In this document: positions 8,760 to 64,000 of the stretch, piece after piece | How the letters are laid out: each line of letters begins with the position of its first letter | Position numbering within the stretch: the stretch's first letter is position 1 | Source: Magallana gigas | Lineage: Eukaryota | Reading direction: 5' to 3' | DNA: 64,000 nucleotides | NCBI RefSeq assembly: GCF_963853765.1 | Contig: NC_088854.1 | Span: 60,078,001 to 60,142,000, forward strand | Made by a program: the position numbers and the translations under genes | Notes under the pieces: generated by a model | What the model saw: the letters and a program-made list of their open reading frames with translations, nothing else | Databases searched by the model: none | Told to the model about the DNA's origin: nothing

Positions 8760-9275
8760 TTAACTCCCGTGATGTTTGGGTGGTCTAGATGGGATGTACA
8801 TCTGGGTCTTGATGTAACTGGGAACTGGACAGTAGGTCGGTGAACCGATTGTATATTTAACTGGGGACCCCATGTGGTCAGGGTTTATGTTGTTTCCATA
8901 AGTTCCCATCTCTTTAGACGCAACAAAGAAACCGTATCGGTGACTTTGTCCAGACTCTAGCAAGTGTGTATATTGAGCTGTAGAAGTCTTCGTCCGGGAC
9001 TGTCATCCATGTAGCCAAGCTCTTCAAACATTGGTTTGACGTTGTCGAATCCGTTTTGGATCACGTTGTTGTGGTCTGTCACCAGTGCTCTTATTGCGTC
9101 CATCGGTAAGTTTAAGTCTCCACTTATCAAAACCTCAGTTTCCGTCTTCAGTGCTAGATACTGCGCCAACGCGGGTTATGTATTTTTTCTGCAATGTCGC
9201 TATCTTCATATCCCGAATGAATCACCAAAGAAAGCATTTTTAAAAATCATTTAAATAATTGACCACCGGTGAACC
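8760..9275 (-). pseudogene. 3' remnant of the EEP-fold gene (unit 1)
   Basis: Frame-broken matches to 57533-58423 (VLISGDLNLPMD, FFVASKEM, MYIPSRPPKHHG*), interrupted by a hairpin arm at 9171-9240. Confidence 0.85.
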
Positions 9276-10122
9276 AAGTCTAGTGACAATGGTACTATTT
9301 TTTCAGTGGCCGGACGCATATAAGCGAGGTCATGTCAAAACTCAAAATTAAAATCATAATAAATTATTTTATAAAATGATGATGAAAGAATTTATATTAA
9401 ATTTTAGCGAAAACTTGTATACAACCTGGTATAAAATAAGATATTGTGCCAAATAAAATAAGATTTATAATTTTCAATTATATGAGTTTATAATTATACT
9501 AGATATTATAATTATATGAAAAAGTTAAGATTCATTTTAATTGTAACAAAGTTAAGAAAAATTCAATCATATTTGATATGTATTTATGTACATGCATGCA
9601 TATGTTTCAAATGAAATAATAAAGATAAGGGAGTGCTTCAAATTTACATTAATTATACACTGTCCCGAGTTTTTGCTTCCACCGTTTTTCGCTTGATATT
9701 TCGATAGCCATCAATGCCTTTTTGCTCAAACTACGTTCATCCACTAATATTATAAATGTTCAGATTATTTGTTTTGAAACGCCCCCTCTGCCGCTTCAGG
9801 TTTCAATACACATCCCAAAATAAAAAGTCTACAGGAATTTTGCATTGCATTAGCCATCAATAAGCCCGGATAACGTTGAACAATTGTGTGAGGTATTGCG
9901 AGTGACTTCCGAATGCCGAAAAGATGTAAACATTTCCCATTATAAATCTCCATAAGAACTATAAAACGCATTTGTTCTTTGTTTTTCATGTTTTTTGATA
10001 CTGTATCATTGTTTATGACTTGGGCAATAAAAATATTGATGTCCATTATAATTGTTTATTTCTTGTTCCGTAATAACGTTGTCAAAATTAGTGCATGTTT
10101 TAAAATCTACAACTGCATAATT

Positions 10123-10702
10123 ATATGATTATATTATTTAAACAATAAATTGCTTTCTTTGGTGATTCATTCGGGATATGAAGGTAGCGACATTGCAGAA
10201 AAAAGACATAACCCGCGTTAGCGGGTTATGTAATTTTTTTCTGCAATGATCGCTACCTTCATAACCCGCATTAATCATAAAAGAAAGCATTTTATTATTT
10301 ATATTAACATCTTTCTTTAAACTAATAAATAAATTGATTATGAAAAGTTAGTAAAATTCACCAAATTATTGTTAATGTACATAAGTACTTTATCTAAAAG
10401 AAACAGCCAATTCGTCTCCTGTGAGACTTTGAGTCTGACATCATCATGATTATTTTGTGCAGTCCATGATTATTCTTAGGTTGCTGGTGGCTTCGACCAA
10501 TCGATAAACAGGGCGTGTCCATTTTATTCCTGTCTGTGAGTTTCAGCCGTTGTAGATTTCGGCCAATCGATAAACGGGGCGTGTAGATTTCAGTGTGACT
10601 GTTTCTATAGAGCTATGAATTAACTATATGTTTCCGGAAGAAATAGAGGAAATAATACTTAGTAGATGTAAATATATGATTATATATCAATCAAAAATGC
10701 TT
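10123..10702. mobile_element. Non-autonomous element with a ~140-bp imperfect hairpin (10151-10289) and short terminal direct repeats; Crypton-like
   Basis: tgctttctttggtgattcattcggg...cataacccgc-gtta-gcgggttatg...aagaaagca folds back. atatgattatat...aaaatgcttt recurs at both ends. Family assignment is inference. Confidence 0.55.
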
Positions 10703-12120
10703 TAATTGTATATATACTTGTCAAAGAACTATTATAGACATTTATAGTATTGTTTTATATTAAGTCCTCATGATTTTCAGTTTAAATTACCACTTTATTA
10801 TTTCAGAAAGTTTGTTTATTGTGCATGTATTTACTAAATCAAGGAATATATGATGTAGCTTATAACATGATTTTATTGAAAGATTCAGCATATTATACAC
10901 ATAAAGATTTTGTTATACGTTATTCTAAATGTTTTGATATACATTGTGTATATATAATAGAAATTGATCTTTTTATTTGTTTTAATGTATAAATGGCACA
11001 TTAAGCGACAAACGGATACCTACATTATTAGCATTCTGTAGTTTTGTCAAAAAGGAAATAAATGAATTGTCAAATTTTAAGTTGTAATTGTTGTATAAAG
11101 TCGAAAGTTCATGACTTAATTAATAGGAAAGATGAGAATAATGGGAGCTATGTGTTGCATTCCTCTATTTCATCTTACAAAAGCAGTGCATTTTTATGTT
11201 GTATAATTTTGATATTTCAATTTTGTCCATAAAACATACATAATAAACAAGAGCTCTATTGATCATATTTAAGGGCTGGATGGTGGTGGCCATTTTTAGG
11301 GTATATTGATCTCCTTGAGAAGAAGAGCTCTTTTAAAGATCTAAGAAAATTTTAAAGTTAAAAAATTAGTACGGAGTTTTTCTTTAGTAAAAAAAAGTCT
11401 ATGACTGAAAAAAGCATATCTAAATATTTTAATTACATCAGGTGATTAATTTGTTGATTACCTATCCTCAATTATCAATAGATTAAAAATTTAACATATT
11501 TTAATTCTTTAAATGAACAGTCGTCAATAGTATTAATTAAAATAATATATAAATTAAATGCATTTAATGGTAATTAAAGTAATATGCCATGATACCTTCA
11601 CGAGAAGTCAGAAAATGTTATTACAAAATCATAATTTAACTTTGAGTCTCATATGACGAAACTAATGCTATATTCTGTCTGTCATGTTTTGTGGTAAAAT
11701 GTATTAGGAGTCTGATATTGAAGCAGAGGTCGTATTGTACAAAAGTCAGTTTGCTATTACTAGCATTCCAATGCACAGACATCTTTCTCCTGGTACAAAG
11801 GTATTCAAATATTATCTATCTTAAATTGTTAAAGTACATTAAAAGTTATTAAAAGTAATATTGTAGTTTAGTTTCATTAATGTTTGTTGAATACCAACTT
11901 TCTGTGATTTCGTTATTTTGTTGATTCACAAACACTGAATGTTCAAAGAAGTTAAATACTCCATAACATATTCCATTGATAGAATATTTGACCAAAAAAT
12001 AAAGTTTCCCTGAAATTGTCATTTTTATGAAATCCATGAAAATAAATGCCGTTCGATATTAATTAAACACAGAAGGTACACATTTCAATAGATAAAAGCT
12101 TTCTTACTTGGACAACCTAC

Positions 12121-14048
12121 CTCTCATTTTGATTTGACACGAGACAGTCGTGGAGCTGACGGATCCGTACCGGTTCACAGACACCACTCGGAACAAGTAC
12201 CTGCTGTCTGGGGACAAGTGGTTCACCCTCACTGAATATACGCCTTCCTCTGTCGTGTTCACGGCATCTGTTGAAGCTTTATAGAAGGGTCCATCATGAA
12301 CATCTGAAGCCCATTGTACAAAGGATGTTTGCTCCACAGAACCAGACGTTGATGTTGCCCATATAATATCGGCATGGTCGTAGCAGCAAACTGCTTTGAT
12401 GAATTTTGGGGAAACAGGCACAACTAGCAATTTAAATAAACATTGTTTAAATTTATTTCAATTTCGAATATTATGAATTATTTTAATTGAATAATTCATG
12501 AATCTATAAAAACATTTTAATGTAAGAAAAATACATAAAAGAATAAAAATATTATACATGTACATGTATATTATTTCAAAATAATTATTACTAGAGCGAA
12601 ATCTACTTCACACTTCAAGCACCATGTCATGAAGGAGATTCAAATGTATGCTTTTCAATTTCTAAAAATTGGAAATCAACATACTATATGCATATTAAAT
12701 CTTGAACTCACAGAGAACATTGATGGCAATTGAAGCAGCATCCGACCACCCAACACTGTTTCTGGCCCTACACTGCAGAGTATTGTTGCCCCACAGTAAA
12801 ACTCTATCAATACTTAAATACGATTCTCTTCCAACAATTTCATGGTTTCCTGGCACCGACCAGAGGTATTCCAGAATTACTACAGGGTTTGCCTTTACAA
12901 CTTCACAGATGACTTTTACTTTCCCGCCAATATTGACATTCAGGACTTTGGGATATGCAATCCTGGTAACGGGTTTGTCTATTCGTGATTGAGAAAAAAC
13001 ATTAATCTTTAAAAATTGTAATCGTGTAAATACATAAATTCAACAACTTGGAATAAAACATACAGAGAATATTCAGGACTGTAGCTGTAGTGAGCGAGTT
13101 GTTATTGTTGGTCGCCCGGCAACGTAAAATTTTTGCGTCATCATTCTTGTCAGCTATCAGTTCCAATTTTTGATTGGTCCCATTAACTTCAGTTTCTCCG
13201 ATAAACCATTGGATGATGGGGGCGGGGTAGGCATCACTATTTACAGAGCACGTAACCAACGTCCTTGTGCCTTCTGCCAAGGTTAACGGATTTTTGTTTG
13301 GTGAAAGAGACAAGTTCCGAACAAATACTTAAAATGAAAACAAAAATTTCAAAACTGCTGAAACCGTACCCATTCAAAATCAATGGAAATGTTATTGTTT
13401 ATTTATGAAAACTTATGGATTTAACTGACTTAGATATATTACAAAAATTATGAAAGTTTTTATTGAAAAGGTTATTCTTAATGCTTGTAGGAATTACCAG
13501 TCTCTAAAAAAAACTTTCATAAAATTACCTGCAATTTTGAGTTGTAAAACCTCGCTTTTGTAACTTTCACCCCCAAAGTAACCACATCGCCAGTCCGAGT
13601 TTTCTTCGTATTTTGTCATGCTTGCAGGAGGAATTGATAGAGAAAATACATTGTCGGAGACACAGTGAAGCTCATACCTTGAACTTTGGGGATTAGAAGG
13701 ACATGTACCATCAGAATTCCATCCAACAGTTCCAACAAGAATATCGTTCCTTGTAAATTTAACAACAGTATACTTTTGGTCTACTGGTGTAAAAATGGAG
13801 CACGTCCACGAATATGCCTTTCCTAATATTGCTGCTGGAAGTGAACCAGTTAAATTATATTGTCCTGGAATTAAAGTTTTATAAAAAAAATATGAACTCT
13901 GCAAAGATACCTTTACTGTCGTCAGCAATGATTGAAATAACAAAATTGAGAAAATGGTTAGTTATTTTATGAACCATGTCTTACCTAGAGAACTGTTGTA
14001 CTTATTCAATAATATTAAGATTATAAAAAACAATCCGATGTTATCCAT
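12121..14048 (-). CDS. IgSF gene copy 2: signal peptide-Ig-Ig-Ig-FN3 (nephrin/SYG-2-like layout); 3' end unresolved
   Basis: Exons 13985-14048, 13529-13864, 13064-13327, 12712-12978, 12121-12423; all open, all phase 1. FN3 motif LSPDSRYLFRVVSVNRYG. Confidence 0.87.
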
Positions 14049-15241
14049 ATTCGTATTTCAGAAAGATATAAACATTATTAGATAAATTTAACGATTTGTG
14101 AATCAACGCTTTAAAAAAATGTCCTGTTCTGTCTAAGAGTTTAAGTGTCATAACTTCGATTCAACCTTTGCTCTTGATGAAATGTGTTACGGACGTCAGT
14201 GTGATTATAGATGAATTCCATTATGATAAAAGGTATATCCGCTCCAAGGGTAAAACACTCCAAGCCAAAGCAATCAACTCAGAGCCCACGATAAAATTCT
14301 ACAATTTGAATGCTTTCCTTGGGACCTGAAATTTAAAAAAAAACCTGGAATATTTCATAAAACAATTCAATAAGAAAACAGCTCTTTTACGACGGCTAGG
14401 TATTTGTGAATTAGAATTTAATATTTTCCTCAGATTAACATAGACGTATTGATTCCCGTATTGATTCTTTGTTCTTTCATGGTTTGATACTCTAGCTGTC
14501 AATTTTTATCACTTAGGCATGACGATATTGATGTTTATTGTAATTGTTTATTTCCCGTTCCGTAATAACGTTGTCCAAGGTTTTAAAATCGACAGGTGCA
14601 TATTTTTTATTCATTCATATTATATATCAATCAAAAATACTTTATTCATCTGAAAATAAATAACGGTTGAAAATGCCCAGTTCATTTATTTGGTTTAATT
14701 GTAACAAAAAATAACCATTCTTGTTTAGCTTTTTTATCGCTGGATATAAATTTTATCCCATGATTATCACACATCAGGCGCTATCAGAGGTGATTATATT
14801 AATGCACATATACTTTTAAGTTGCACAAAAGTATAACTTACCAGTGTCACCATAAATCAGTGAACATAAAGTTTAAATGACCATCAATTCGAAACTTAAT
14901 TTTAACAATAACAAATTATTGTGAAAAAATATACTATATTCCTTTTTTATTTATTCAATTCACATGTGATATTTATCAGCTCTTTTAAACTTCATGAAAA
15001 ATATCAAAAACATCCAAGTATGTCACTCAAGTTTATTGGAAACCTTTTCATGGAAATAAGTTACTTGTATTTTAAAAACCATTATGTCACTTGAGTTTTA
15101 ACTTTCATAACATTATGCTTTATTTCAGAATAATCATTATTATTATAAATACTTGATACCTTGTTCATTGGTCTTTTTGCTGCAAACCCGGACAGGAAAA
15201 TAGTACATATAATAGTCTGTATAATTTCTTTAAATTGAATG

Positions 15242-15765
15242 TTAACCCCCGTGATGTTTGGGTGGTCTAGATGGGATGTACATCTGGGTCTTGATGTAAC
15301 TGGGAACTGGACAGTAGGTCGGTGAACCGATTGTATATTTAACTGGGGACACCATTTGGTCAGGGTTTCCAATTGAGTTTATGTTGTTTTCATAAGTTCC
15401 CATCTCTTTGGACGCAACGAAGAAACCAGCATCGGTGACTTTGTCCAGACTCTAGCAAGTGTGTATCTTGAGCCGTCGAAGTCTCCGGTTGGGACTATCA
15501 TCCATGTAGCCAAGCTCTTCAAACATTGGTTTGACGTTGTCGATTTCGTTTTGGATCACGTAATTGTTGACTGTCACCAATGCTCTTTTTGCGTCCATCG
15601 GTAAGTTTAAGTCTCCACTAATCAAAACCCCAATTTTTTTCGTCTTCAGTGCTAGATACTGCGCCAACGCGGATTATGTATTTTTTCTGCAATGTCGCCA
15701 TATCCCGAATGAATCACCAAAGAAAGCATTTTTAAAATTGTTTAAATAATGGACCACCGGTGAAC
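15242..15765 (-). pseudogene. 3' remnant of the EEP-fold gene (unit 2)
   Basis: VLISGDLNLPMD...GYMDD...RRLRRLKIHTC; frameshifts; same hairpin-arm insertion as unit 1. Confidence 0.85.
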
Positions 15766-16579
15766 CAAGTCTAGTGACAATGGTACTATTTTTTCAGTGG
15801 CCGGACGCATATAAGCGAGGTCATGTCAAAACTCAAAATTAAAATCATAATAAATTATTTTATAAAATGATGATGAGAGAATTTATATTAAATTTATATT
15901 AAATTTTAGCCAAAACTTGTATACAACCTGGTATAATTTAAAAAAAATAAGATTTTTAATTTTCAATTATATGAGTTTATAATTATATGATTATATAATT
16001 ATACTGGATATTATAATTATATGAAAAGGTTAAGATATGTATTTATGTACATGCATGTATATGTTTCAAATGAAATAATAAAGATAAGGGAGTGCTTCAA
16101 ATTTACATTAATTATACACTGTCCCGAGTTTTTGCTTCCACCGTTTTTCGCTTGATATATCGATAGCCATCATTACCTTTGTGCTCAAACTACGTTCATT
16201 CACTATTATTAAAAATGTTCAGATTATTTGTTTTGAAACGCCCCCTCTGCCGCTTCAGGTTTCAATACACTTCCCAAAATAAAGAGTCTACAGGAACTTT
16301 GCATTCCATTAGCCATCAATAAGCCCGGATAACGTTGAACAATTGTGTGAGGTATTGCGAGTGACTTCCGAATGCCGAAAAGATGTAAACATTTCCCATT
16401 ATAAATCTCCATAAGAACTATAAAACGCATTTGTTCTTTGTTTTTTCATGTTTTTTGATACTGTATCATTGTTTATGACTAGGGCAATAAAAATATTGAT
16501 GTCCATTATAATTGTTTATTTCCTGTTCCCCAATAAAGTTGTCAAAATTAGTGCATGTTTTAAAATCGACAACTGCATA

Positions 16580-17165
16580 ATTATATGATTATTATATTAT
16601 TTAAACAAAAAAATGCTTTCTTTGGTGATTCATTCGGGATATGAAGGTAGCGACATTGCTGAAAAAAGACATAGCCCCCGTTAGCGGGTTATGTATTTTT
16701 TTTCTGCAATGATCGCTACCTTCATAACCCGCATTAATCATAAAAGAAAGCATTTTATTATTTATATTAACATCTTTCTTTAAACTGATTAATAAATTGA
16801 TTATGAAAAGTTAGTAAAATTCACTAAATTACTGTTAATGTACATAAGTACGTTAGCTAAAAGAAACAGCCAATTCGTCTCCTGTTAGTCTGACATCATC
16901 ATGATTCTTTTGTGCAGTCCGTGATTATTCTTAGGTTGCTAGTGGTTTCGACCAAACGATAAACAGGGCGTGTCAATTCTATTCCTGTCAGTATTTTGTG
17001 AGTTTCAGCCGTTGTAGATTTCGACCAATTGATAAACGGGGCGTGTAGATTTCAGTGTGACTGTTTCTATAGAGCTATGAATTAACTATATGTTTCCGGA
17101 AGAAATAGAGGAAATAATACTTAGTAGATGTAAATATATGATTATATATCAATCAAAAATGCTTT
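16580..17165. mobile_element. Second copy of the hairpin (Crypton-like) element
   Basis: Hairpin ~16611-16755; collinear with 10123-10702. Confidence 0.55.
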
Positions 17166-18577
17166 AATTGTATATACTTGTCAAAGAACTATTATAGACA
17201 TTTATAGTATTGTTTTATATTAAGTCCTCATGATTTTCAGTTTAAATTACCACTTTATTATTTCAGAAAGTTTGTTTATTGTGCAAGTATTTACTAAATC
17301 AAGGAATATATGATGTAGCTTATAACATGATTTTATTGAAAGATTCAGCATATTATACACATTAAGATTTTGTTATACGTTATTCTAAATGTTTTGATAT
17401 ACATTGTGTATATATAATAGAAATTGATCTTTTTATTTGTTTTAATGTATAAATGGCACATTGGGCGACAAACGGATAGCTACATAAATAGCATTCTGTA
17501 CTTTTGTCAAAAAGGAAATAAACGAATTGTCAAATTTTAAGTTGTAATTGTTGTATAAAGTCGAAAGTTCATGACTTAATTAATAGGAAAGATGAGAATG
17601 ATAGGAGCTATGTGTTGCATTCCTCTATTTCATCTTACAAAAGCAGTGCATTTTTATGTTGTATAATTTTGATATTTCAATTTTGTCCATAAACATAGAT
17701 AATAAACAAGAGCTCTATTGATCATATTTAAGGGCTGAATGGTGATGGCCATTTTTAGGGTATATTGATCTCCTTGAGAAGAAGAGCTCTTTTAAAGATC
17801 TAAGAAAATTTTAAAGTTAAAAAAATTGTACGGAGTTTTTCTTTGGTAAAAAAAGTCTATGGCTGAAAAAAGCATATCTAAATATTTTAATTACATCAGA
17901 TGATTAACTTGTTGATTACCTATCCTCAATTATCAATAGTTTAAAACTTTAACATATTTTAATTCTTTAAATGAACAGTCGTCAATAGTATTAATTAAAA
18001 TAATATGTAAATTAAATGCATTTAATGGTAATTAAAGTAATATGCCATGATACCTTCACGAAAAGTCAGAAAATGTTATTACAAAAATCATATTTTTACT
18101 TTGAGTCTCACATGACGAAACTAATGCTATATAAAATTCTGTCTGTCATATTTTGTGGTAAAATGTGTTAGGAGTCTGATATTGAAGCAGAGGCCGTCTT
18201 GAACAAAAGTCAGTTTGCTATTACTAGTACTCCAATGCACAGACATCTTTCTTCTGGTAAAAAGGTATTCAAATATTATCTATCTTAAATTGTTAAAGTA
18301 CATTAAAAGTTATTATAAGTAATATTGTAGTTTAGTTTCATTAATGTTTGTTGAATACCAACTTTCTGTGATTTTGTTGATTCACAAACAATGAATGTTC
18401 AAAGAAGTTAAATACTCCATAACATATTCCATTGATAGAATATTTGACCACAAAATAAAGTTTCCCTGAAATTGTCATTTTTATGAAATCCATGAAAATA
18501 AATGCCGTTCGATATTAATTAAACCACAGTAGGTACAGATTTCAATAGATAAAAGCTTTCTTACTTGGACAACCTAC

Positions 18578-20502
18578 CTCTCTTTTTGATTTGACACGAG
18601 ACAGTCGTGGAGCTGACGGATCCGTACCGGTTCACAGACACCACTCGGAACAAGTACCTGCTGTCTGGGGACAAGTGGTTCACCCTCACTGAATAAACGT
18701 CTTCCTCTGTCGTGTTCACAGTGTCTGTTGAAGCTTTATAAAAGGGTCCATCATGAACATCTGAAGCCCATTGTACAAAGGATGTTTGCTCCACAGAACC
18801 AGACGTTGATGTTGCCCATATAATATCGGCATGGTCGTAGCAGCAAACTGCTTTGATGAACTTTGGGGAAACAGGCACAACTAGCAATTTAAATAAACAT
18901 CTATTTAAATTTATTTCAATTTCGAATATAATGAATAATTTTAATTGAATAATTCATGAATCTATAAAAACATTTTAATGTAAGAAAAATACATAAAAGA
19001 ATAAAAATATTATACATGTACATGTATATTATTTCAAAATAATTATGACTAGAGGGAAATCTACTTCACACTCCAAGCACCATGTCATGAAGGAGATTCA
19101 AATGTATGCTTTTCAATTTCTAAAAATTAGAAATCACCATACTATATGCATTTTAAATCTTGAACTCACAGAGAACATTGATGGCAACTGAAGCAGCATC
19201 CGACCACCCAACACTGTTTCTGGCCCTACACTGCAGAGTATTGTTGCCCCACAGTAATTCTCTATCAATACTTAAATACGATTCTCTTCCAACAATTTCA
19301 TGGTTTCCTGGCAGCAACCAGAGGTATTCCAGAATTACTACAGGGTTTGCCTTTACAACTTCACAGTTGACTTTTACTTTCCTGCCAATATTTTCATTCA
19401 GGACTTTGGGATATGCAATCCTGGTAACGGGTTTGTCTGTTCGTGATTGAGAAAAAAAAACATTAATCTTTAAAAATTGTAATCGTGTAAATACATAAAT
19501 TCAGCAACTTGGAATAAAACATACAGAGAATATTCAGGACTGTAGCTGTAGTGAGCGAGTTGTTATTGTTGGTCGCCCGGCAACGTAATATTTTTGCGTC
19601 ATCATTTTTGTCAGCTATCAGTTCCAATTTTTGATTGGTCCCATTAACTTCAGTTTCTCCGATAAACCATTGGATGATGGGGGCGGGGTAGGCATCACTA
19701 TTTACAGAGCACGTAACCAACGTCCGTGTGCCTTCTGCCAAGGTTAACGGATTTTTGTTTGGTGAAAGAGACAAGTTCCGAACAAATACTTAAAATGAAA
19801 ACAAAAATTTCAAAACTGCTGAAACCGTACCCATTCAAAATCAATGGAAATGTTATTGTTTATTTATGAAAACTTATGGATTTAACTGACATAGATATAT
19901 TACAAAATTTATGAAAGTTCATATTCATTAATGCTTGTAGGAATTACCAGTCTCTAAAAAAAACTTTCATAAAATTACCTGCAATTTTGAGTTGTACAAC
20001 CTCGCTTTTGTAACTTTCACCCCCGAAGTAACCACATCGCCAGTCTGAGCTTTCTTCGTATTTCGTCATGCTTGCAGGAGGAATTGATAGAGAAAATACA
20101 TTTTCGGAGACACAGTGAAGCTCATACCTTGAACTTTGAGGATTAGAAAGACATGTACCATCAGAATTCCATCCAACAGTTCCAACAAGGATATCGTTCC
20201 TTGTAAATTTAACAACAGTATACTTTTGGTCTACTGGTGTAAAAATGGAGCACGTCCACGAATATGCCTTTCCTAGTATTGCTGCTGGAAGTGAACCAGT
20301 TAAATTATATTGTCCTGGAATTAAAGTTTTATAAAAAAAAAAAATATGAACTCTGCAAAAATGACTTTACTGTCGTCAGCAATGATTGAAATAATAAAAT
20401 TGAGAAAATGGTTAGTTATTGTATGAACCATGTCTTACCTAGAGAACTGTTGTAATTATTCAATAATATTAAGATTATAAAAAACAATCCGATGTTATCC
20501 AT
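18578..20502 (-). CDS. IgSF gene copy 3: signal peptide-Ig-Ig-Ig-FN3; 3' end unresolved
   Basis: Exons 20439-20502, 19979-20314, 19525-19788, 19170-19436, 18578-18880; all open, all phase 1. Confidence 0.87.
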
Positions 20503-21656
20503 ATTCGTATTTCAGAAAGATATAAACATTATTAAATAAATTTTACAATTTGTGATTCAACGCTTTAAAAAAAATGTCCTGGTCTGTCTAAGAGTTTAAG
20601 TGTCATAACTTCGATTCAACCTTTGCTCTTGATGAAATTTGTTGCGGACGTCGGTATGATTATACATGAATCTCATTATGATAAAAGGTATATCCGCTCC
20701 AAGGGTAAAACACTCCAAGTGAAAGCAATTAACTTAGAGCCCACGATAAAATTCTACAATTTGAATGCTTTCCTTGGGACTTGAAATTGAAAATAAAATC
20801 TGGAATATTTCAAAAAACAATTCAATAAGAAAACAGCTCTTTAACGACGGCTAGGTATTTGTGACTTAGAATTTAATATTTGCCTAAGATTAACATAGAT
20901 GTAGTGCATTGTACAGATACCTGTATTGATTCCTTGTTTTCATGGTTTGATACTCTGTAATTGTTTATGAATTAGACGATGAAGATATTGATGTTCATTG
21001 TAATTGTTTATTTCCCGTTCCGTTATGACGTTGTCAAAGGTTTTAAAATCGACAGGTGCATATATTTTTTTTTAATTCATATTATACATCAATCAAAAAT
21101 ACTTTATTCATCTGAAAATAAATAACGGTTGAAAATGCCAAAAGTCAATTATTTGGTTTAATTGTAATAAAAAATAATCATTGCTTGTTTAGCTTTCTTA
21201 TCGCTAGATATAAATTTTATCCCTGATTATCACACGAAAATGCTTCAGCAGTGGTGATTATATTAACGCACATGTACTTAAAGTTGCACAAAAGTATAAC
21301 TTACCAGTGTCACCATAAATCAGTGAACATAAAGTTTAAATAACCATCAATTCGAAACTTAATTTTAACAATTACACATTATTGTGAAAAAAAATACTAC
21401 ATTACTTTTTTACTTATTCAATTCACATGTTTCATATTTATCAACTCGTTTAAACTTCATGGAAAAGATTAAAAACACCCAGTATTTTAAACACCATTAT
21501 GTCACTTGAATTTTAACTTTTATGTCATTATGCTTTATTTCAGAATAATAATTACAATTAAGAGCACTGGAAACCCTTTTCATTGGTCTTTTTGCTGCAA
21601 ACCCGGAGAGGGAAATAGTACATATAACAGTCTGTATAATTTCTTTTAATTGAATG

Positions 21657-26500: not shown

Positions 26501-26669
26501 AACATGCTTAATCAACTCAAGTGTTTGATATCTTCATTTGAAATGTTACAATCAGAATAGTGAATATATTTATATGTAAATGCATATACTTATATTACAT
26601 AGATATACACACATATATAAATGGTTCTTCAAAATAAGCATGTTTTCCAGTACTTGACTTTACAATCAT

Positions 26670-43481: not shown

Positions 43482-43556
<75 letters not shown>

Positions 43557-50500: not shown

Positions 50501-53197
50501 ATCTTTACCAACAGGAATAAACGTAAAAGGATTTAATTGTCCTTGATTTTCAATAATACGCCGAAGTCTATGAAAAGTCTGTGATAAAGACATTGTCATT
50601 ATATTGCAAAAATATTAGTATATCTCCAAAAGATGGATATTTCTTTTCTTAACGTTTGTCTTTAACATTAATATTGAATTAATATAATTGCATGATATTA
50701 TTACTTAAAATGTTTGTTACTGACTGACTACAGAAATATATCGGGTTCATAAATCTCATAGACGACGAGGCGAAACCGGGCTGTTTCTGTAATTAGTCAG
50801 TAACAAACCTATTAAATGTTTTGTTTTTCCAGGTCTACCGGTATCAAGAGAGATATTTATTCACACAAAGCGACGACCTTCCGAAATCCATGTTAAAGTA
50901 AAAAAGGCCTTACAACTCGTCCTATTTTACACAATCAAACTCTTCATTTTCACTTTTCAAACACTCTTTGAAAATTTTCATTGCACCCTTATTTACAAAC
51001 AATGTTTTGTTGTTTTTCAAATTTTGAATGTTATGTTTCTTTCCTCCGCAGATATTTGAAAAAATCTCGACGCAGCTATTTTAGTCTTCTCCAGACCCCG
51101 CCGTCACCAACTTTCCTTAAGTCAATACACAGCCTCAAGTCTGAGTCTTTACCTCAAGTCTATGCACTTTTCTTTTAAGGATTTGGGGTGAGGATTAAGT
51201 TGAGTGATTTGAAAATTTTGGTGGTGGTGGGGCCAAAAATGATAATGTGATGTCATTTCAAAGGGTAACTACACTCTTATTTTAAAGTAATTCTAAAAGA
51301 CAACTACTTCAAATATTTTAATATCTTACAGATTACTGTTTCTGTATTAATTATAATGAAATGTGAAGATGAGTATGCAAAGCGTCAGCCATATTGCAGA
51401 ATCCTTATATTAATCAGACGGACTGGGGCATTTAATTATGGGAAAACAAATATAAATGTTTTAAATCCGAAATGCTTTAACTTGACGCAACGCCACTTAT
51501 TCCAATGGTACTTTATAATCAGTATTTGGTGAAAATTCCGACCATAAACACACAAAAGCAATTCTTTCGATCCAATATCATCTTATTATCTTAGTATTCC
51601 CCTACATTTTGGCAAATTCATTTTGTAACAAAAAGTCGCCTGTACCATATATCCATATTACAATATACAATACATTTGATGAATTCAGTGAATTATGAAC
51701 TATTCAATGTGCTTGCCCCAGTATCAGTTGTCGTCTCTGATGTCTCAATGAAACTGGACATTTCTAGACCCGTGGGGTTACCATCAGAAATCACCACGAC
51801 TCTTGCTCGAATGTGGAGAGGAGGTATAATTGCCGTGTGTCCTACAATAACAAGGATGTTTTACAACTAGATATTTTTTTTTGGTTGCAACACCTTATTT
51901 GATGGGCTTAAGAAATTAATTTATAATGTGTAACTTAACTTGCCTCACAAGACGACGCGTGTGTAGACATTAGTCTGCTTGAGGTTATATCTAACTTTTG
52001 CACAATTTTATGTCTTTTTTTAAATGCATTTATCTGAACATAACGTATGTAAAAAATTAAGACATAAGAAATAAATACAACGTGAACCTATGTTATAGCT
52101 CCAAAAGAAATACAGAAATCTTTTTGTTAAAATTGAAAAAATTGAGAAAATTAGTAGAAATAAAATCAATTCCCTAAATACAGATTTTAGATTTTATGTT
52201 TATATGATTAATAATGGATTAATAATGGATATTGTTTCCAGTTACATGTACCTCCTCCAAACTTAATGCATGAATATGATAGAATGATTCCTGCTTCTAA
52301 AGGTGATGGTCCTTCACAGTGGATCTTATCTGTTGATAAAAAATGTCATCATTTTCAAGTTGTATCATTTTAAAAGTTAAAACGAAGTTCCCATTCCATC
52401 TAAAGTTTTCAGTGGCATCTCACTTCAATTGCAATTGTTTAAAAAGAGCAACCTCAAATGGCGTTGTAACGATTTTAGTTGAAATTTGCCAAATTTTAGC
52501 TTCCCATTCTTGTTTTTTTACTATACTTTGTCATTGTGTTTCTAATAAATTCAAATTTGAGATTTGTTTGTTAGTTATTATTGAGGAACAAATTAAAGCT
52601 CATAATATATTGTCATGAAATCAAACCTCAGGTCATGTTGTAAATTATTTGAAAAGTGTTTCTTTAAATTTTAAGAAAACTATTGTTTACAAAAGGACTG
52701 CTGAATAAAAAATACTAAAAAACCAAACGTAACAAACATTAGAATATATTCATTCTTGTTCATATCGAACTAGGAAATATTGTCTTAATTAAGTATTAGG
52801 AATAACCCTGGATGCGTTGTAAATATTAAAAATTGAAAATTAAGTCAGATATATTCAGATAAAATTTTGACCTTCATGACATACCAAGGCATTTCTTGAT
52901 AGAATAATAATTGTTTGAATAATAATGAAGAAATTTCACTTCTTTTCCACATCCTATCACAGCGATGTTGTCATCTAAATGCAAGGACTCGTATTCTAAA
53001 AAGAAAAATAAAGAGGTTATTTGTTAACATAATAAGGTGCAAAAAAATTACAAAGCTTTTGATTATACAAACTTTCCTGTACATTTAGGCTATTTAATTC
53101 CTTTCGCTCTTTTGATTGTGATGTATTAAAATCAATAAAATGATTTAGAAATATGTGATAGCAAATGTCAATATGTGTAACAAAATTAATTTTAACT

Positions 53198-53261
<64 letters not shown>

Positions 53262-54032
53262 TAAAACATTGATTGTATGACCTCAGCTTAAAGTCATGAT
53301 CAATCTTAAAGTCATAAGAAACCCTTGTGCAAAGTTTAAGCCTCCTGTGTTTTTTCTTTCAAATATTTAGACTTAACAAGGTCAGACAGAATAAAAAAAT
53401 CAGAGAGACGGACATAAAAATAAAGTGACACAATAAATTAATATACCCTCTTAGACTTAATTCTTGGAAAAAAGTTATTATCAACTAATGTATAAATATG
53501 TAAATTATTATCAAGGATCATTACACCAACATGAAATGAACAGGAAATATCTTGTTTTTTAACTAATCAGGAAATTATTTCTATAAAAATGGAATTTTTA
53601 GCTAAAAGATATCGTACCGTTTAAAATATCTAAAAAGGCTGTCTTCATTTGTCGGACTCCCTCCCCTGTCATGCTTTCCGATGTATCCAATATGAAGACT
53701 GAACAGATTCCATTTCCTTGTTGATATTTTCTTTTATTGTCTTCAAAGTATCAATTTCTCAAGATAAAAAAGGGAACATTTTTCATTTACATTAATGAAT
53801 GAAAATTTGATGAAGATGCTAACACGAAGCGTTCCTTTTCAGTTAGACCTTAAAGTGACTTTTTAATGGAACAGACGTGAAATGCATAAATATCGTTATA
53901 GCCTTATATTGTAATTTCAACAAATTTTTTTTAACTTCATGATAATTATATTGAATAAGTTTAATACGCACTTTCATTGGCTTCCTCGTACGCTCTCTGT
54001 ATCCAAATAGCCTCTGCAGGCCGAGTTTCCAT
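47549..54032 (-). CDS. vWA + 2x MIB/HERC2 protein, copy B (exon-2 5' end altered)
   Basis: Same exon set and sizes as copy A (e.g. 53972-54032, 52252-52329, 51717-51841, 49350-49451, 48953-49142), ending SAK*. Exon 2 lacks the copy-A acceptor; an AAG acceptor starting the exon at 53740 would keep frame. Confidence 0.78.
50712..50808. repeat. 97-bp foldback/mini-MITE with 25-bp inverted ends
   Basis: gtttgttactgactgactacagaaa versus the reverse complement gtttgttactgactaattacagaaa (23/25). Confidence 0.7.
53201..53260 (+). repeat. (TG)n microsatellite
   Basis: Direct reading. Confidence 0.95.
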
Positions 54033-57532: not shown

Positions 57533-58423
57533 TTAACCCCCATGATTTTTTGGTGGTCTGGGTGGAATATACATTTCTGTTTTGGTGTAGGTGGGCTCCG
57601 GGCAGTAAGTCGGAGTGCTCGTGCTCGTTTTTAATTGGAGACCCGCAGATCGATAGGTCAAGTTTTCCAATTTGGCATATTTGGTTTCCCTCAGTTGCAT
57701 CTCTTTTGAGGCCACAAAGAAGTTGCAGTCGCTGATTTTCTCCTGACACTTGCAAGTGTGTAATTTGAGCTGTCGAAGTCTTCGTACCGGTCTGTGTATG
57801 TTTTCGGTCATGCAATCCATGTAACCAAGTTGCTGAAACAATGGCTTGATGCTATCAATCCCTGCTTCAACCATTTTATTGTGCTCTGTTATCAGCCCCA
57901 TAATCGTATCCATCGGTAAATTAAAGTCCCCTCCAATTAACACTTCAGTTCCAGTAAACCAAGCTAGGAATTGTGCATACATCATGAACTGCTTTCCGTT
58001 TTCATAGATGACCGGTGAACCTCTTTCTTTCATTGTCAATTCCCAATGCCAAGACACACAGATAAACTGTTTAACGATTTGGGATGCAGGCGCTGGTGAA
58101 CAAACGTCGACCATAGGTGAGAGGACTTTGTCAAAATCGCAGTTTGGTATTTTGATACCTGGTCCTGTTGGTTGTTGGCGGATCCTCAGGCGCGTGGAGT
58201 CGTACAGAAGGACTGTTTCGTTGTTAGTCGGGTCCAGTAGCTGCTGGTAGCTGGTCTGAGTGAATGTGTCCCCAGGATTGTCTCCAGGAAGAAACATTAT
58301 ATCGGGCCTCTCGTTTTCAACGAGGTTGCGTAATTTATCTTTGCGGTAGTCATTGTACATTCTTCCTTTCCGGCCCGAGGCGTTCATGCTGATTATATTT
58401 AACACATCTGTGTCATACCCCAT
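57533..58423 (-). CDS. Intronless EEP (endonuclease/exonuclease/phosphatase, DNase-I-like)-fold protein, 296 aa, catalytically degenerate
   Basis: Ordered motifs IISMN, ERPDIMFL, TVLLYD, FICVSWH, VLIGGDFN, FFVAS match the EEP beta-sandwich. The paralog at 63646 differs at many synonymous sites. Confidence 0.8.
   Translation of the reverse strand: MGYDTDVLNIISMNASGRKGRMYNDYRKDKLRNLVENERPDIMFLPGDNPGDTFTQTSYQQLLDPTNNETVLLYDSTRLRIRQQPTGPGIKIPNCDFDKVLSPMVDVCSPAPASQIVKQFICVSWHWELTMKERGSPVIYENGKQFMMYAQFLAWFTGTEVLIGGDFNLPMDTIMGLITEHNKMVEAGIDSIKPLFQQLGYMDCMTENIHRPVRRLRQLKLHTCKCQEKISDCNFFVASKEMQLRETKYAKLENLTYRSAGLQLKTSTSTPTYCPEPTYTKTEMYIPPRPPKNHGG

Positions 58424-61583: not shown

Positions 61584-61640
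<57 letters not shown>
61584..61640 (+). repeat. (TAGA)n microsatellite
   Basis: Direct reading. Confidence 0.95.
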
Positions 61641-61641
<1 letters not shown>

Positions 61642-61814: not shown

Positions 61815-62085
61815 CTCACTATCAGTCGTTGTCGATACAGTTTCCATGGAACCGAAGGGTTCCCATCAGAATCACCACTACCCTTGCTCGGATGTTGAGA
61901 GGATGAATACCTGCTGTATGACCTGCAATTATAAGAATAATTGACAAAGTAGATCAAAGGCCGCTCATGCTTAACATTTTTATATGGGTATTGTTTTATG
62001 ATACCTCCTCCAAACTTAATGCATGAATATCACAGAATGATTCCTGCTTCTAAAGGGGATGGTCCTTTACAATAGATGTCATTAG
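61815..62085 (-). pseudogene. vWA-MIB/HERC2 copy C fragment (exons 4-5 only)
   Basis: GPSPLEAGIIL*YSCIKFGG with a stop at 62030-62032; GHTAGIHPLNIRARVVVI followed by a 1-nt deletion at SDG. Confidence 0.85.
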
Positions 62086-62329
62086 TTTGAAGATAATGGA
62101 AAACTTAAAATTACATGGCTTCTTAAGTAAAGGCAAATGTAACCTTTCAATCCAAGTTCCACCAGTTATATCACATCTTTAAACAAGCATAATTGTTTAC
62201 GAATAAACATTGTTAGGAATTGAGGGGAAATTGTCAAATTTAACGTATCATTTCTTATAATTTCATTGCTCCGTCAAGCTGTTTCGGGTGTTAACCAAAA
62301 TTTGAGTGCCATTTATGGAGTTAAAATTG

Positions 62330-62700
62330 TCAAGCTACTGACAAACAAGTTGATAAAACAGGACTATCAACAGTCTCGTTTGAAGTCATCTTTCGTATGT
62401 TCTATGGTCGATACAACGACCTTGTCCATATTTCACTGGGTGGTATGCTGACTGACGTTTTTCATACTAATTGTTAGACCATAATTGATCACCTAATTGT
62501 CTACGGACTTTTTCGTTTTTCCCGATTTCGAAAAAGAGCACACTTCGGGTTTGACCGGTTAGCAGAGGATGCTTAATCCTCCTAGGCACCCGATCCTACC
62601 TCTATCTTTTTAGAGGTCTGTGTTGATCTGCTTTGAATTTGTATTTAGTTTAATGGATTTTTCATATGGTTGACAGTTTGTTATTGTCATTGTTCAGAAG
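62330..62700 (+). mobile_element. 5'-truncated retroelement 3' end (Penelope-like RT tail plus UTR)
   Basis: LLTNKLIKQDYQQSRLKSSF then, shifted, RMFYGRYNDL; followed by gaccggttagcagaggatgcttaatcctcctaggcacccgatcctacc. Clade assignment from recall. Confidence 0.6.
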
Positions 62701-63645
62701 AAAATTATTGAAACATGGGCAATTATCCATGGTTCGTATAACTTAAGATGTAAGTATTCTTAACTGTGACAAAACCTTTGTAGAGATAAAAAGGGAATCT
62801 GTTTTAAAGACAGAACCGTGAGTACTAGAAAGTGTTTCTCATTTTTTCATCGGTTGATTTCCACAGTACCAAAGCTGTTGGGTTGCTAAAATAGTTGTAA
62901 AGGGAATTCTTATATGTGTGGGTGTTGATTGTTTATCTTTTAAGTTTCTGAAAACAAAGTGTTTAAACTAATTAAATAACCCACTGTTACCAATTTTATT
63001 ATATTGCAAACAATTAGATAATTATGTACCTTACATATATTATCATTGAAAGATATATTATCGGTGGGTATTCTTTCATTAAAAATGCAATCGTTCTTGG
63101 AGGCAGAAAACTATCACTTCGAATTCTAAAAACCTTAATTTGTCTTGGAACCATCTTAAAATTATCATCAAAACTGTATGAGTCAATTAATAATCTCAAG
63201 AGTTGGGACCATGTGTCCCCTGCATGCAAACCAATTTTAGCAAATTTAAAAATTCAATTCAATCATTTCAGAATCAAGAATTCCAAACTTTAAAAAAAAT
63301 CTCTTTTTATCGTTTTGCTCAATCTATTGAGTATATAACGTACCACATCATCCTATGATAACAAAAAAAACCACAGATGTGTTGGTGATATTTCTGTTTG
63401 TTATCTATATATGTCATGTAAAACATTTCAGAAAAAAGAAAAATAAATTGCATAATTTTTATTAAAAGGAAGGAAACTTCACAACAAAACAAAAACATTT
63501 CATAACAATAACTTAGATGAAAAGTATCAAAAGAAAACCTTTGAAAGGATAAAACAAATAACGAAAAATTGATAATAAAACATATTTTTATAACAAATGA
63601 TATTGATAATCTCATGGATCATTGTATTTTTACTTGGCTTCGTAT

Positions 63646-64000
63646 TTAACCCCCATGATTTTTTGGTGGTCTTGGTGGGATGTACATCTGGGTCTTGGTG
63701 TAGGTGGGTTCTGGACAGTAGGTAGGAACTCGGGTACTTGTGTTTAATTGGAGACCTGCGGAGCGATAGGCCAGGTTTTCTAACTTGGTGTGCCTGGTTT
63801 CCATCAGTTGCATTTCTTTGGACGCCACGAAGAAGCTGATGTCGGTGTTCTTCTCCTGGTTGTTACAGGTGTGCAGTTTAAGCTGGCGAAGTCTGCGTTC
63901 TGGTCTGTGTATGTTTTCGGTCATGCACTCCATGTAACCAAATTTCTCAAAGTCGGGTTTGACGCTGTCAATCCCATCTTGAATAATTCTGTTGTGTTCT
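63646..64000 (-). CDS. 3' part of a second EEP-fold gene (5' end outside the window)
   Basis: Open frame EHNRIIQDGIDSVKP...PPRPPKNHGG*; the last 95 aa are 78/95 identical to the 57533 copy. Confidence 0.85.
   Translation of the reverse strand, partial: EHNRIIQDGIDSVKPDFEKFGYMECMTENIHRPERRLRQLKLHTCNNQEKNTDISFFVASKEMQLMETRHTKLENLAYRSAGLQLNTSTRVPTYCPEPTYTKTQMYIPPRPPKNHGG

What the first reader, a model, noticed from the sequence alone, without database searches (positions are those of the whole stretch)
8760..64000. Three unrelated families co-oriented and co-duplicated, with an EEP copy heading nearly every module
In transcription order: EEP > vWA fragment > EEP > vWA-MIB B > vWA-MIB A > psiEEP > IgSF4 > psiEEP > IgSF3 > psiEEP > IgSF2 > psiEEP > IgSF1. 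That is 6 EEP, 3 vWA-MIB and 4 IgSF copies, all on the minus strand. Non-coding blocks are also shared (55260-55400 vs 62715-62860; 57385-57410 vs 63595-63620), so EEP + vWA was itself a duplication unit. Birth-and-death turnover of a surface Ig receptor, a cytosolic vWA/peptide-binding adaptor and a pseudo-nuclease resembles a fast-evolving innate-immune cluster. A functional link among them is inference only.
Basis: partly seen in the sequence, partly recalled or inferred. Interest (0 to 1): 0.72.

Follow-up and report, generated by a model that had tools for sequence, protein, structure and literature searches.

The report
Oyster three-family duplicated gene cluster
The repeated order of three unrelated gene families on one strand of this oyster chromosome is real, but a few block duplications explain it, including one that broke a gene, and every test I could run found the families apart elsewhere, so the cluster is ordinary.

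Summary
On the minus strand the order is EEP3 > vWA-MIB C (both outside the window) > EEP2 > vWA relic > EEP1 > vWA-MIB B > vWA-MIB A > EEP N-half > IgSF4 > EEP C-half > IgSF3 > EEP C-half > IgSF2 > EEP C-half > IgSF1.

A few block duplications explain the order:
- **EEP plus vWA-MIB** was copied en bloc. Non-coding blocks are colinear in all three units, and dS is about 0.7-0.8 for both genes.
- **The four "psiEEP" pieces** are one paralog, EEPx, broken once. The N-half and the C-halves meet at the same 5 bp (GTTGG). A contig from another oyster carries EEPx intact between the 3' flank of vWA-MIB A and a single IgSF gene.
- **The 6.46-kb C-half plus IgSF unit** then amplified recently (dS 0.05-0.2).

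A functional link found no support:
- EEP occurs only at this locus in the genome.
- More than 40 vWA-MIB exons and 11 IgSF paralogs lie elsewhere without EEP.
- EEP genes in Ostrea, Saccostrea and Mytilus have no vWA-MIB or related IgSF within 10 kb.
- vWA-MIB arrays in C. virginica and S. echinata have no EEP.

Co-expression was not tested, and the complex prediction gave no verdict. The assembly gap hides the end of coding exon 1 of vWA-MIB A.

The parts
63649..64000 (-). EEP2, an intact 296-aa EEP-like gene. Its 5' part runs off the window (full ORF 63649-64536).
   Evidence: It is a mosaic: the 5' 300 nt are 97-99% identical to EEP1 and the 3' 450 nt are 97-100% identical to EEP3.
61853..62083 (-). 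vWA relic: two exon-equivalents of a vWA-MIB gene, out of frame with each other.
   Evidence: 74-81% identity to the guide proteins over 27 aa, plus the IRARVVVI motif.
62692..63619 (.). Non-coding blocks between EEP2 and the relic, colinear with 55237-57411 between EEP1 and vWA-MIB B.
   Evidence: five colinear HSPs, 60-69% identity, E 1e-9 to 1e-22.
57536..58423 (-). EEP1, an intact intronless 296-aa gene with an EEP fold but without the catalytic Glu (FLPGD) or an SDH-type His.
   Evidence: Pfam PF03372 scores only 15.2 bits against a cut-off of 24.5. A profile of the family matches TDP2 at E 0.016. The AlphaFold model has pTM 0.79 and its best Foldseek hit is TDP2, E 1.5e-8. There are 46 homologues in oysters and mussels. 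Omega is about 0.15.
47552..54032 (-). vWA-MIB B: about 11 exons, a vWA domain with an LDTSES MIDAS motif, two MIB/HERC2 domains and no ligase module.
   Evidence: A spliced transcript-derived protein, P0071, is 92-93% identical exon by exon.
45545..45674 (.). Assembly gap at the exon 1 / intron 1 border of vWA-MIB A.
   Evidence: Not filled.
38183..45726 (-). vWA-MIB A, with the same exon set as B, a 3-kb intron holding foreign plus-strand ORFs, and no upstream EEP partner.
   Evidence: no stops in 234 aligned codons; omega 0.18-0.31.
35606..36038 (-). N-terminal half (aa 1-149) of the broken paralog EEPx. It has 2 stops and ends in ...CTGTTGG.
24306..33338 (-). IgSF4 pseudogene. Its SP, V, Ig2 and Ig3 exons lie at 31980-33338 and its FN3 exon at 24306-24622. 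It has 2 in-frame stops and a Mutator-like transposase/exonuclease element in the Ig3-FN3 intron.
21660..22079 (-). EEPx C-terminal half, copy 3. It starts GTTGGCGCAG.
18564..20502 (-). IgSF3: five intact exons (SP, V, Ig, Ig, FN3) and no TM exon in its unit.
15245..15668 (-). EEPx C-terminal half, copy 2.
12121..14048 (-). IgSF2: five intact exons whose borders are confirmed by RNA contigs. The FN3 exon ends at a GAG|GTAGGT donor.
8766..9170 (-). EEPx C-terminal half, copy 1.
6256..7608 (-). IgSF1, exons SP to Ig3. Its FN3, TM and tail exons lie outside the window, at -583 to -1615, behind a Harbinger-type insertion.
5996..24235 (.). Tandem array with a 6456-bp period (2.8 units, about 92% identical) that carries the C-half plus IgSF unit.

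Best explanation
This is a lineage-specific, transposon-rich patch of segmental duplication on an oyster chromosome. Earlier scan notes name the species as Pacific oyster; I did not check that. The regular order and shared strand come from how the DNA was copied, not from a functional module.

Step 1, shown: an EEP gene with its downstream vWA-MIB gene was duplicated en bloc. This gave EEP3-C, EEP2-relic and EEP1-B. vWA-MIB A has no upstream EEP partner.

Step 2, shown: a fourth EEP paralog, EEPx, once lay intact between vWA-MIB A and a single IgSF gene, as it still does in another oyster.

Step 3, shown as an outcome, mechanism inferred: one rearrangement put a second IgSF copy into EEPx at codon ~149. 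A 5-bp overlap (GTTGG) remains on both halves.

Step 4, shown: unequal crossing-over then amplified the 6.46-kb [EEPx C-half + IgSF] unit, so the dead C-half recurs in front of IgSF3, IgSF2 and IgSF1.

The intact genes are ordinary coding genes under purifying selection: EEP1-3, vWA-MIB A-C and the exons of IgSF1-3. IgSF4, the vWA relic and EEPx are casualties of the turnover.
For: - **En-bloc units.** Coding and non-coding blocks are colinear between 53.5-58.9 kb, 61.5-65 kb and 84.9-91.4 kb. dS is 0.78 for EEP1-EEP3 against 0.67 for B-C.
- **One break in EEPx.** The N-half homology ends at EEP1 coordinate ~57979 and every C-half starts at ~57976. The sequences read ...CTGTTGG| and |GTTGGCGCAG.
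- **The unbroken state exists elsewhere.** Logan contig L012 has an intact 289-aa EEPx (P0009). Its left side aligns to 37877-35606 and its right side to 15668-12691, 9170-6235 or 22079-19149.
- **Young IgSF array.** Period 6456 bp, about 92% identity. dS is 0.05-0.085 among IgSF1-3 and 0.17-0.20 to IgSF4.
- **No linkage elsewhere in this genome.** All 10 EEP matches lie at C2:60.086-60.169 Mb. vWA-MIB exons also lie on C6 at 18.4-18.9, 3.4-3.6, 49.1 and 52.3 Mb and on C9. IgSF paralogs lie at C2:48.4-49.6 Mb.
- **No linkage in other species.** EEP genes of O. edulis, S. cucullata, S. echinata (two places) and M. galloprovincialis have no vWA, MIB or related Ig exon within +-10 kb. The vWA-MIB arrays sampled in C. 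virginica (40 kb) and S. echinata (25 kb) have no EEP. In S. echinata the two families sit on different scaffolds.
- **Selection.** Omega is 0.14-0.19 for EEP, 0.18-0.31 for vWA-MIB and 0.3-0.5 for IgSF. IgSF exons are 96-99% identical against 83-92% for introns.
Against: - The vWA-MIB A - EEPx - IgSF neighbourhood is shared by at least two oysters, so the adjacency is older than the array.
- Three EEP-vWA-MIB pairs have kept both genes intact and constrained over dS ~0.7.
- The other-species tests reach only +-10 kb around each gene.
- The species behind L012 is unknown, and orthology of the C. virginica and S. echinata vWA-MIB genes to A, B and C was not established.
- Co-expression was not examined.
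- The exact rearrangement that split EEPx is not resolved. Candidates are an insertion with a target-site duplication, a template switch, or a transposon-assisted event; an arm of a MITE-like repeat abuts the C-half.
Confidence: 0.75

Rival explanations
1. EEP and vWA-MIB form a two-gene functional pair. A catalytically dead EEP-fold protein would work with a cytosolic vWA/MIB adaptor, for example through the invariant C-terminal PPRPPK..GG tail of EEP binding the SH3-like MIB domains. Selection would then favour copying them together.
For: - There are three co-oriented pairs 3.5-4.8 kb apart, with both members intact and constrained.
- The EEP family has an invariant C-terminal IPxRPPKHxGG that contains a PxxPxK motif.
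- An automatic gene model of this or a very close genome even fuses EEP3 with vWA-MIB exons (P0073). That is probably a prediction artefact.
- Earlier scan notes report a separate vWA protein fused to a dead GIY-YIG nuclease domain in this genome. I did not test that.
Against: - EEP is absent next to more than 40 other vWA-MIB exons in this genome and next to the vWA-MIB arrays of C. virginica and S. echinata.
- EEP genes of Ostrea, Saccostrea and Mytilus have no vWA-MIB within 10 kb.
- vWA-MIB A has no EEP partner.
- No Mytilus protein appears among the 35 matches to the vWA-MIB query, although Mytilus has EEP.
- En-bloc duplication predicts the same pattern without any function.
Confidence: 0.12
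2. All three families belong to one fast-evolving innate-immune supercluster: a surface or secreted Ig receptor, a cytosolic adaptor and a pseudo-nuclease. They would be kept together for co-regulation.
For: - There is copy-number turnover and pseudogenisation, and the non-synonymous to synonymous count is raised in the third Ig exon (8-12 N against 1-2 S between IgSF1-3).
- vWA-MIB is a large expanded family.
- In C. virginica a vWA-MIB array sits beside an LRR-TIR gene.
- The three-gene neighbourhood is shared with another oyster.
Against: - There is no direct evidence of an immune role for any member, and no paper was found.
- The families are unlinked at paralogous loci and in other genera.
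- The IgSF array destroyed an EEP paralog when it expanded, which speaks against selection to keep EEP with IgSF.
Confidence: 0.08
3. Part of the repetition is an assembly artefact, with haplotypes or collapsed repeats stitched in tandem around a scaffold gap.
For: - There is an N gap at 45545-45674.
- In my experience oyster genomes are very heterozygous; I did not test this here.
- DNA runs of other individuals hold only 0.56-0.65 of the sampled words of one unit.
Against: - The units differ by 8-14% and carry different transposon insertions.
- Units 1-3 share the same junction sequence.
- EEP1-3 and vWA-MIB A-C differ at dS 0.5-0.8, far beyond allelic divergence.
- The gap flanks are colinear with the paralogs.
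Confidence: 0.05

Closest known systems
Birth-and-death tandem gene clusters made by segmental duplication and unequal crossing-over (for example vertebrate KIR/LRC or olfactory-receptor arrays, and expanded gene families in oysters)
   Same: Co-oriented paralogs, block duplication that carries neighbouring genes and non-coding DNA along, mosaic or converted copies (EEP2), pseudogenes and relics, and many transposons.
   Different: Two adjacent arrays of unrelated families are interleaved here with pieces of a third. One duplication can be reconstructed base by base, because it split a gene that is still intact in a related oyster.
TDP2 and other endonuclease/exonuclease/phosphatase (EEP) fold enzymes (Pfam PF03372)
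   Same: Same fold (Foldseek E 1.5e-8, TM 0.54/0.67). The N-terminal Asn motif and the GDFN motif are kept.
   Different: It scores below the Pfam cut-off. The metal-binding Glu is replaced (FLPGD) and there is no SDH-type His; the family has an invariant ASKE there. It also has an extra invariant C-terminal tail ending in GG. The family is seen only in oysters and mussels, apart from some unnamed environmental and run-derived sequences.
MIB/HERC2 domains of Mind bomb E3 ligases. From my own knowledge, these bind Notch-ligand tails.
   Same: Two tandem MIB_HERC2 domains (82.8 bits on the relative P0056).
   Different: They are fused to an N-terminal vWA domain with a MIDAS motif. There is no ZZ, ankyrin or RING part, so no ligase module. 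Longer paralogs add a WWE domain.
Clustered protocadherin or UGT1A loci, where variable cassettes are spliced to shared constant exons. This is a resemblance only.
   Same: There are several tandem cassettes, each with its own start codon and signal-peptide exon. A conserved splice donor ends each cassette. TM and tail exons are present only downstream of the last cassette.
   Different: Splicing from IgSF2 or IgSF3 to the distant TM exon was not observed, so those copies may simply be truncated or secreted forms.

Membership tests
EEP superfamily (PF03372) | Score above the Pfam gathering cut-off | tested here: not met
   15.2 bits against a cut-off of 24.5, E 0.018.
EEP superfamily (PF03372) | Four-layer alpha/beta sandwich fold shared with TDP2, APE1 and CCR4 | tested here: met
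   The model has pLDDT 75 and pTM 0.79. 172 PDB chains match at E<=0.001, and all 50 listed are EEP-fold proteins, with TDP2 on top.
EEP superfamily (PF03372) | Catalytic set: Asn, metal-binding Glu, Asp/Asn of GDxN, and His of SDH | tested here: not met
   N14 and GGDFN are kept. Where TDP2 has LQE the family has LPG (alignment). No SDH is present; the family has an invariant ASKEMQL instead. The His position is inferred from sequence only.
vWA-MIB proteins (vWA plus tandem MIB_HERC2) | vWA domain with a DxSxS MIDAS motif | tested here: met
   The LDTSES motif is in exon 2 of A, B and C. PF13519 and PF00092 pass their cut-offs on P0053, which is 99% identical to copy A.
vWA-MIB proteins (vWA plus tandem MIB_HERC2) | Two MIB_HERC2 domains | tested here: met
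   Single exons score below the cut-off (18.8 and 20.2 bits). The full-length relative P0056 scores 82.8 bits in 2 stretches, and all its exons map to A, B and C.
Mind bomb-type E3 ligases | RING, ankyrin or ZZ modules | tested here: not met
   None are found in P0056, P0061 or the mapped exons.
Immunoglobulin superfamily receptor | Signal peptide, Ig domains, FN3 and a TM segment | tested here: inconclusive
   The SP exon, three Ig-like exons and an FN3 exon are present in all four units. Pfam hits are mostly below cut-off, though C2-set_2 scores 22.3 against 21. A TM exon exists only behind IgSF1.
Functionally linked gene cluster (conserved module) | Linkage repeated at independent loci in the same genome | tested here: not met
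   EEP occurs only at this locus. vWA-MIB and IgSF paralog arrays elsewhere lack it.
Functionally linked gene cluster (conserved module) | Synteny conserved across genera | tested here: not met
   limited to +-10 kb. Only one other oyster shares A-flank - EEPx - IgSF.
Functionally linked gene cluster (conserved module) | Co-expression | not tested
Functionally linked gene cluster (conserved module) | Physical interaction of the products | tested here: inconclusive
   Complex prediction gave no verdict.
Variable-cassette / constant-exon locus (protocadherin-like) | Each cassette spliced in cis to shared downstream exons | not testable with these tools
   The donor GAG|GTAGGT is conserved in all four FN3 exons. 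One RNA contig leaves the FN3 exon at the donor for sequence outside the laid stretch, but its origin (IgSF1 or IgSF2) is unknown.

The most novel reading that the evidence does not exclude
The dead-nuclease EEP protein and the vWA-MIB adaptor are a real two-component module of an oyster-specific defence or signalling pathway. The invariant proline-rich, GG-ended tail of EEP would dock on the MIB domains. Next to it, the IgSF array would work as a protocadherin-like locus, with several ectodomain cassettes sharing one TM/tail exon set.
Probability: 0.08. Interest if true: 0.65.

Novelty: new member of a known kind. Interest (0 to 1): 0.3.

Why it matters
- It shows that a striking, regular interleaving of three gene families can arise from two or three block duplications, and that the copies should be counted as events rather than as instances.
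- It gives a clean, base-level example of a gene being killed by the expansion of its neighbour. EEPx is split at one 5-bp site here and is intact in a related oyster. That makes it a usable presence/absence marker for oyster haplotypes.
- It defines gene models for three uncharacterised bivalve families: a TDP2-like EEP-fold protein without the catalytic Glu and His, vWA with two MIB domains and no ligase part, and an SP-V-Ig-Ig-FN3 IgSF. These can now be tested directly.

Tried and rejected
- **Complex prediction**, EEP1 against the vWA-MIB B orthologue P0071: no verdict. This is not evidence either way.
- **Literature searches** on MIB_HERC2 plus oyster, MIB/HERC2 domain plus von Willebrand plus bivalve, IgSF tandem duplication in Crassostrea, and six LOC gene ids: nothing relevant.
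- **The search for homologous proteins with the FN3 exon**: it returned unspliced genomic ORFs plus one old M. gigas model (P0047) that joins FN3 to the tail exons and skips the TM exon. It could not show what the FN3 exons of IgSF2 and IgSF3 splice to.
- **Reading the four IgSF units as one long gene**: rejected. Each unit has its own ATG and signal-peptide exon, and FN3 to V splicing would be out of frame (phase 1 into phase 2).
- **EEP as a transposon-borne endonuclease**: rejected. There are 3 intact copies at one locus, it is conserved from oysters to mussels, and omega is about 0.15.
- **A simple tandem duplication as the origin of the N-half / C-half split**: rejected. It would leave the first N+C copy intact. 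Instead the N-half is followed by about 450 bp of unrelated sequence and then IgSF4.
- **Terminal inverted repeats** at the ends of the inserted block: none found by eye.
- Two Pfam calls failed on my own coordinate errors.

Full report
**What is in the window**

The window is G000:C2:60078001-60142000 of a 564-Mb genome. Earlier scan notes call it Pacific oyster, and the protein matches are to Magallana, Crassostrea, Saccostrea, Ostrea and Mytilus.

A self-comparison shows a 6456-bp tandem repeat from 5996 to 24235, about 92% identical. An older partial fourth unit lies at 31839-33358 (86-88% identical). EEP-like similarity links 8.8, 15.2, 21.7 and 35.7 kb to 57.5 and 63.6 kb.

I fetched 40 kb beyond the window's high end and 20 kb before its start. 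Searching these with the window's exons gave this minus-strand order, in window coordinates:

| Element | Position | State |
|---|---|---|
| EEP3 | 90030-90920 (outside) | intact |
| vWA-MIB C | 74892-85239 (outside) | intact |
| EEP2 | 63649-64536 | intact, runs off the window |
| vWA relic | 61853-62083 | two exon-equivalents |
| EEP1 | 57536-58423 | intact |
| vWA-MIB B | 47552-54032 | intact |
| vWA-MIB A | 38183-45726 | intact in the visible part |
| EEP N-half | 35610-36038 | fragment with stops |
| IgSF4 | 24306-33338 | pseudogene |
| EEP C-half | 21660-22075 | fragment with stops |
| IgSF3 | 18564-20502 | intact exons |
| EEP C-half | 15245-15664 | fragment with stops |
| IgSF2 | 12121-14048 | intact exons |
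| EEP C-half | 8766-9166 | fragment with stops |
| IgSF1 | 6256-7608, then FN3 at -899..-583 | intact exons |

**The assembly gap**

The gap at 45545-45674 begins right after the 17 visible codons of coding exon 1 of vWA-MIB A (45726-45676). In copies B and C the sequence homologous to both gap flanks is one continuous stretch:
- 53982-54322 and 53592-53743 in B.
- 85466-85694 and 85097-85379 in C.

So the flanks belong to one gene on one strand. The end of exon 1 and its splice donor are hidden, and the frame cannot be checked.

**The three families**

*EEP.*
- EEP1 is an intronless 296-aa ORF. Pfam sees Exo_endo_phos only below its cut-off (15.2 against 24.5 bits).
- A profile of 31 homologues weakly matches TDP2 (E 0.016).
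- The AlphaFold model (pTM 0.79) hits TDP2 and other EEP-fold structures (best E 1.5e-8; 172 chains at E<=0.001).
- The family keeps the N-terminal Asn and GGDFN. It has LPG where TDP2 has LQE, and ASKE where EEP enzymes have SDH. It ends in an invariant IPxRPPKHxGG.
- It has 46 matches, and the named ones are all oysters and mussels.

*vWA-MIB.*
- A representative search with one vWA exon gave spliced models. These map exon by exon to A, B and C.
- Pfam finds VWA plus two MIB_HERC2 domains and no ligase part. Longer paralogs add a WWE domain.
- P0071 is a 425-aa protein from a 1.4-kb run-assembled contig, so it comes from a spliced transcript. It is 92-93% identical to B, which shows that B or its orthologue is expressed.

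*IgSF.*
- RNA contigs laid on 8700-14600 give CT..AC joints at 12423/12712, 12978/13064, 13327/13529 and 13863/13984.
- The resulting reading frame is MDNIGLFFIILILL... followed by a V-like domain, two Ig domains and an FN3 domain.
- All five exons are present without indels in all four units. IgSF4 has two in-frame stops.

**How the order arose**

*1. EEP plus vWA-MIB units.*
- Between EEP1 and B, and between EEP2 and the relic, five non-coding blocks are colinear.
- The EEP1-to-B interval is likewise colinear with the EEP3-to-C interval, including the promoter and exon 1-2 region of the vWA-MIB gene.
- dS is 0.78 for EEP1-EEP3 and 0.67 for B-C. This fits a single copying of both genes.
- EEP2 is a mosaic: EEP1-like over its first ~300 nt (97-99%) and EEP3-like over its last ~450 nt (97-100%). 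That indicates unequal crossing-over or gene conversion.
- vWA-MIB A shares exon 1 and ~300 bp upstream with B but has no upstream EEP.

*2. The psiEEP pieces.*
- The N-half covers aa 1-149 and each C-half covers aa ~150-296.
- In EEP1 coordinates the N-half homology stops at ~57979 and the C-halves start at ~57976.
- At the sequence level the N-half ends ...CTGTTGG and each C-half begins GTTGGCGCAG, a 5-bp overlap.
- P0009 is a 289-aa protein that clusters apart from EEP1-3. It is encoded intact on a 5.7-kb contig, L012, from another oyster.
- The left part of that contig aligns to window 37877-35606, which is the A 3' flank plus the N-half. Its right part aligns to 15668-12691, which is a C-half plus the IgSF SP, V, Ig2 and Ig3 exons. 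It aligns equally to the other units.
- So the ancestral order was vWA-MIB A - EEPx - IgSF. One event placed a second IgSF copy (now IgSF4) inside EEPx.

*3. Amplification.*
- The [C-half + IgSF] unit then multiplied. The same junction sequence is found in units 1-3.
- dS is 0.05-0.085 among IgSF1-3 and 0.17-0.20 to IgSF4.
- All units are closer to each other (86-92%) than to L012 (81-84%), so the expansion followed the split from that oyster.
- The four psiEEP pieces therefore count as one gene and one event.
- The mechanism of the split is not settled. The sequence abutting the C-half is an arm of a MITE-like palindromic repeat present 1 kb away in every unit.

**Is there a functional link?**

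In this genome:
- All EEP matches lie in this 83-kb stretch.
- The MIB exon finds 45 places. Most are on C6 (18.4-18.9, 3.4-3.6, 49.1, 52.3 Mb), and vWA exons co-locate there.
- The V exon finds 11 paralogs at C2:48.4-49.6 Mb.
- None of these places has an EEP gene.

In other species:
- EEP genes occur as tandem pairs or singletons with no vWA, MIB or related Ig exon within +-10 kb. This holds for O. edulis, S. cucullata, S. echinata (two places) and M. galloprovincialis.
- One S. echinata copy has an unrelated IgSF gene 8 kb away on the other strand.
- A 40-kb C. virginica region holds vWA-MIB-WWE, an LRR-TIR gene and two vWA-MIB genes but no EEP. A 25-kb S. echinata region also has none.
- In S. 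echinata the two families are on different scaffolds.

The complex prediction gave no verdict. No paper on these families was found.

**Selection**

| Genes | Omega |
|---|---|
| EEP1-3 | 0.14-0.18 |
| vWA-MIB A-C | 0.18-0.31 |
| IgSF1-4 | 0.30-0.50 |

IgSF exons are 96-99% identical while an intron is 83-92% identical. The third Ig exon shows an excess of non-synonymous changes, but the counts are small. The intact copies are therefore real genes under constraint, and the cluster shows ordinary birth-and-death turnover.

**Open point on the IgSF array**

- A TM exon (about -1101 to -1254), a small exon and a tail exon ending ...HQYQEITVS lie only behind the FN3 exon of IgSF1.
- Units 2-4 lack this ~650-bp segment, yet all four FN3 exons keep the donor GAG|GTAGGT.
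- One RNA contig leaves the FN3 exon exactly at that donor for sequence outside the laid stretch.
- Either IgSF2 and IgSF3 are secreted or truncated forms, or they share the downstream TM and tail exons. I could not decide this with the remaining tools.

**Verdict**

The reading that these are duplication units is supported. The recurring "EEP heads each module" pattern and the functional link are not supported. This is a new, well-resolved example of a known kind of locus.

Noticed in passing
57536-58423 and alignment A1: Every member of the EEP-like family starts with MG, and every member ends in ...IPxRPPK(H/N)xGG with GG as the last two residues. The tail contains a PxxPxK motif. Its role is unknown.
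   Followed up: partly
63649-64000 (ORF continues to 64536 in L003): EEP2 is a mosaic. Its first ~300 nt are 97-99% identical to EEP1 and its last ~450 nt are 97-100% identical to EEP3, which indicates gene conversion or unequal crossing-over.
   Followed up: yes
Outside the window, L007 (window coordinates -1101 to -1615); FN3 donors at 12120, 18577, 24319: TM, small and tail exons of the IgSF gene exist only behind IgSF1, while all four FN3 exons keep the same splice donor. This may mean shared constant exons, or secreted copies. An old M. gigas model (P0047) joins FN3 to the tail and skips the TM exon.
   Followed up: partly
26670-30398: A Mutator-like transposase (PF20700) is followed by a DEDDh exonuclease with a PML_C tail (PF00929, PF25244). 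It sits in the Ig3-FN3 intron of IgSF4.
   Followed up: partly
2444-5086: Harbinger-type element on the plus strand (DDE_Tnp_4). It is part of a ~6.5-kb insertion in the same Ig3-FN3 intron of IgSF1.
   Followed up: partly
9155-9259 and 10072-10370 (repeated in each unit): A MITE-like palindromic repeat, with one arm abutting the EEPx C-half junction. The 9.1-10.9 kb stretch has very high depth in RNA-run contigs, typical of a multicopy element.
   Followed up: partly
58759-59021: A short tandem repeat (about 108-bp period, 95% identical) lies just upstream of EEP1. It gives a repetitive ORF on the plus strand.
   Followed up: no
L008:3050-8167 (outside the window, about 12-17 kb before its start): A 1706-aa uninterrupted gag-protease-RT-RNaseH-integrase ORF of a Ty3/gypsy-type LTR retrotransposon. 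It is flanked by 738-bp direct repeats that are 100% identical. I only observed it.
   Followed up: no
P0073 (protein of this or a very near genome): An automatic gene model fuses EEP3 with exons of vWA-MIB C and B into one 743-aa protein. This is probably a prediction artefact caused by the co-oriented repeats.
   Followed up: no
L014 (C. virginica, 40 kb): The vWA-MIB genes there lie in a row with a vWA-MIB-WWE gene and an LRR-TIR (Toll-like) gene, all on one strand.
   Followed up: no
Third Ig exon: 6256-6522, 12712-12978, 19170-19436: Between IgSF1-3 the third Ig exon has 6-12 non-synonymous against 1-2 synonymous differences, while the second Ig exon has none against 1-3. The counts are too small for a test.
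   Followed up: partly
40021-40769: Two plus-strand ORFs with no Pfam match sit inside the 3-kb intron of vWA-MIB A. They are probably remains of a mobile element.
   Followed up: no
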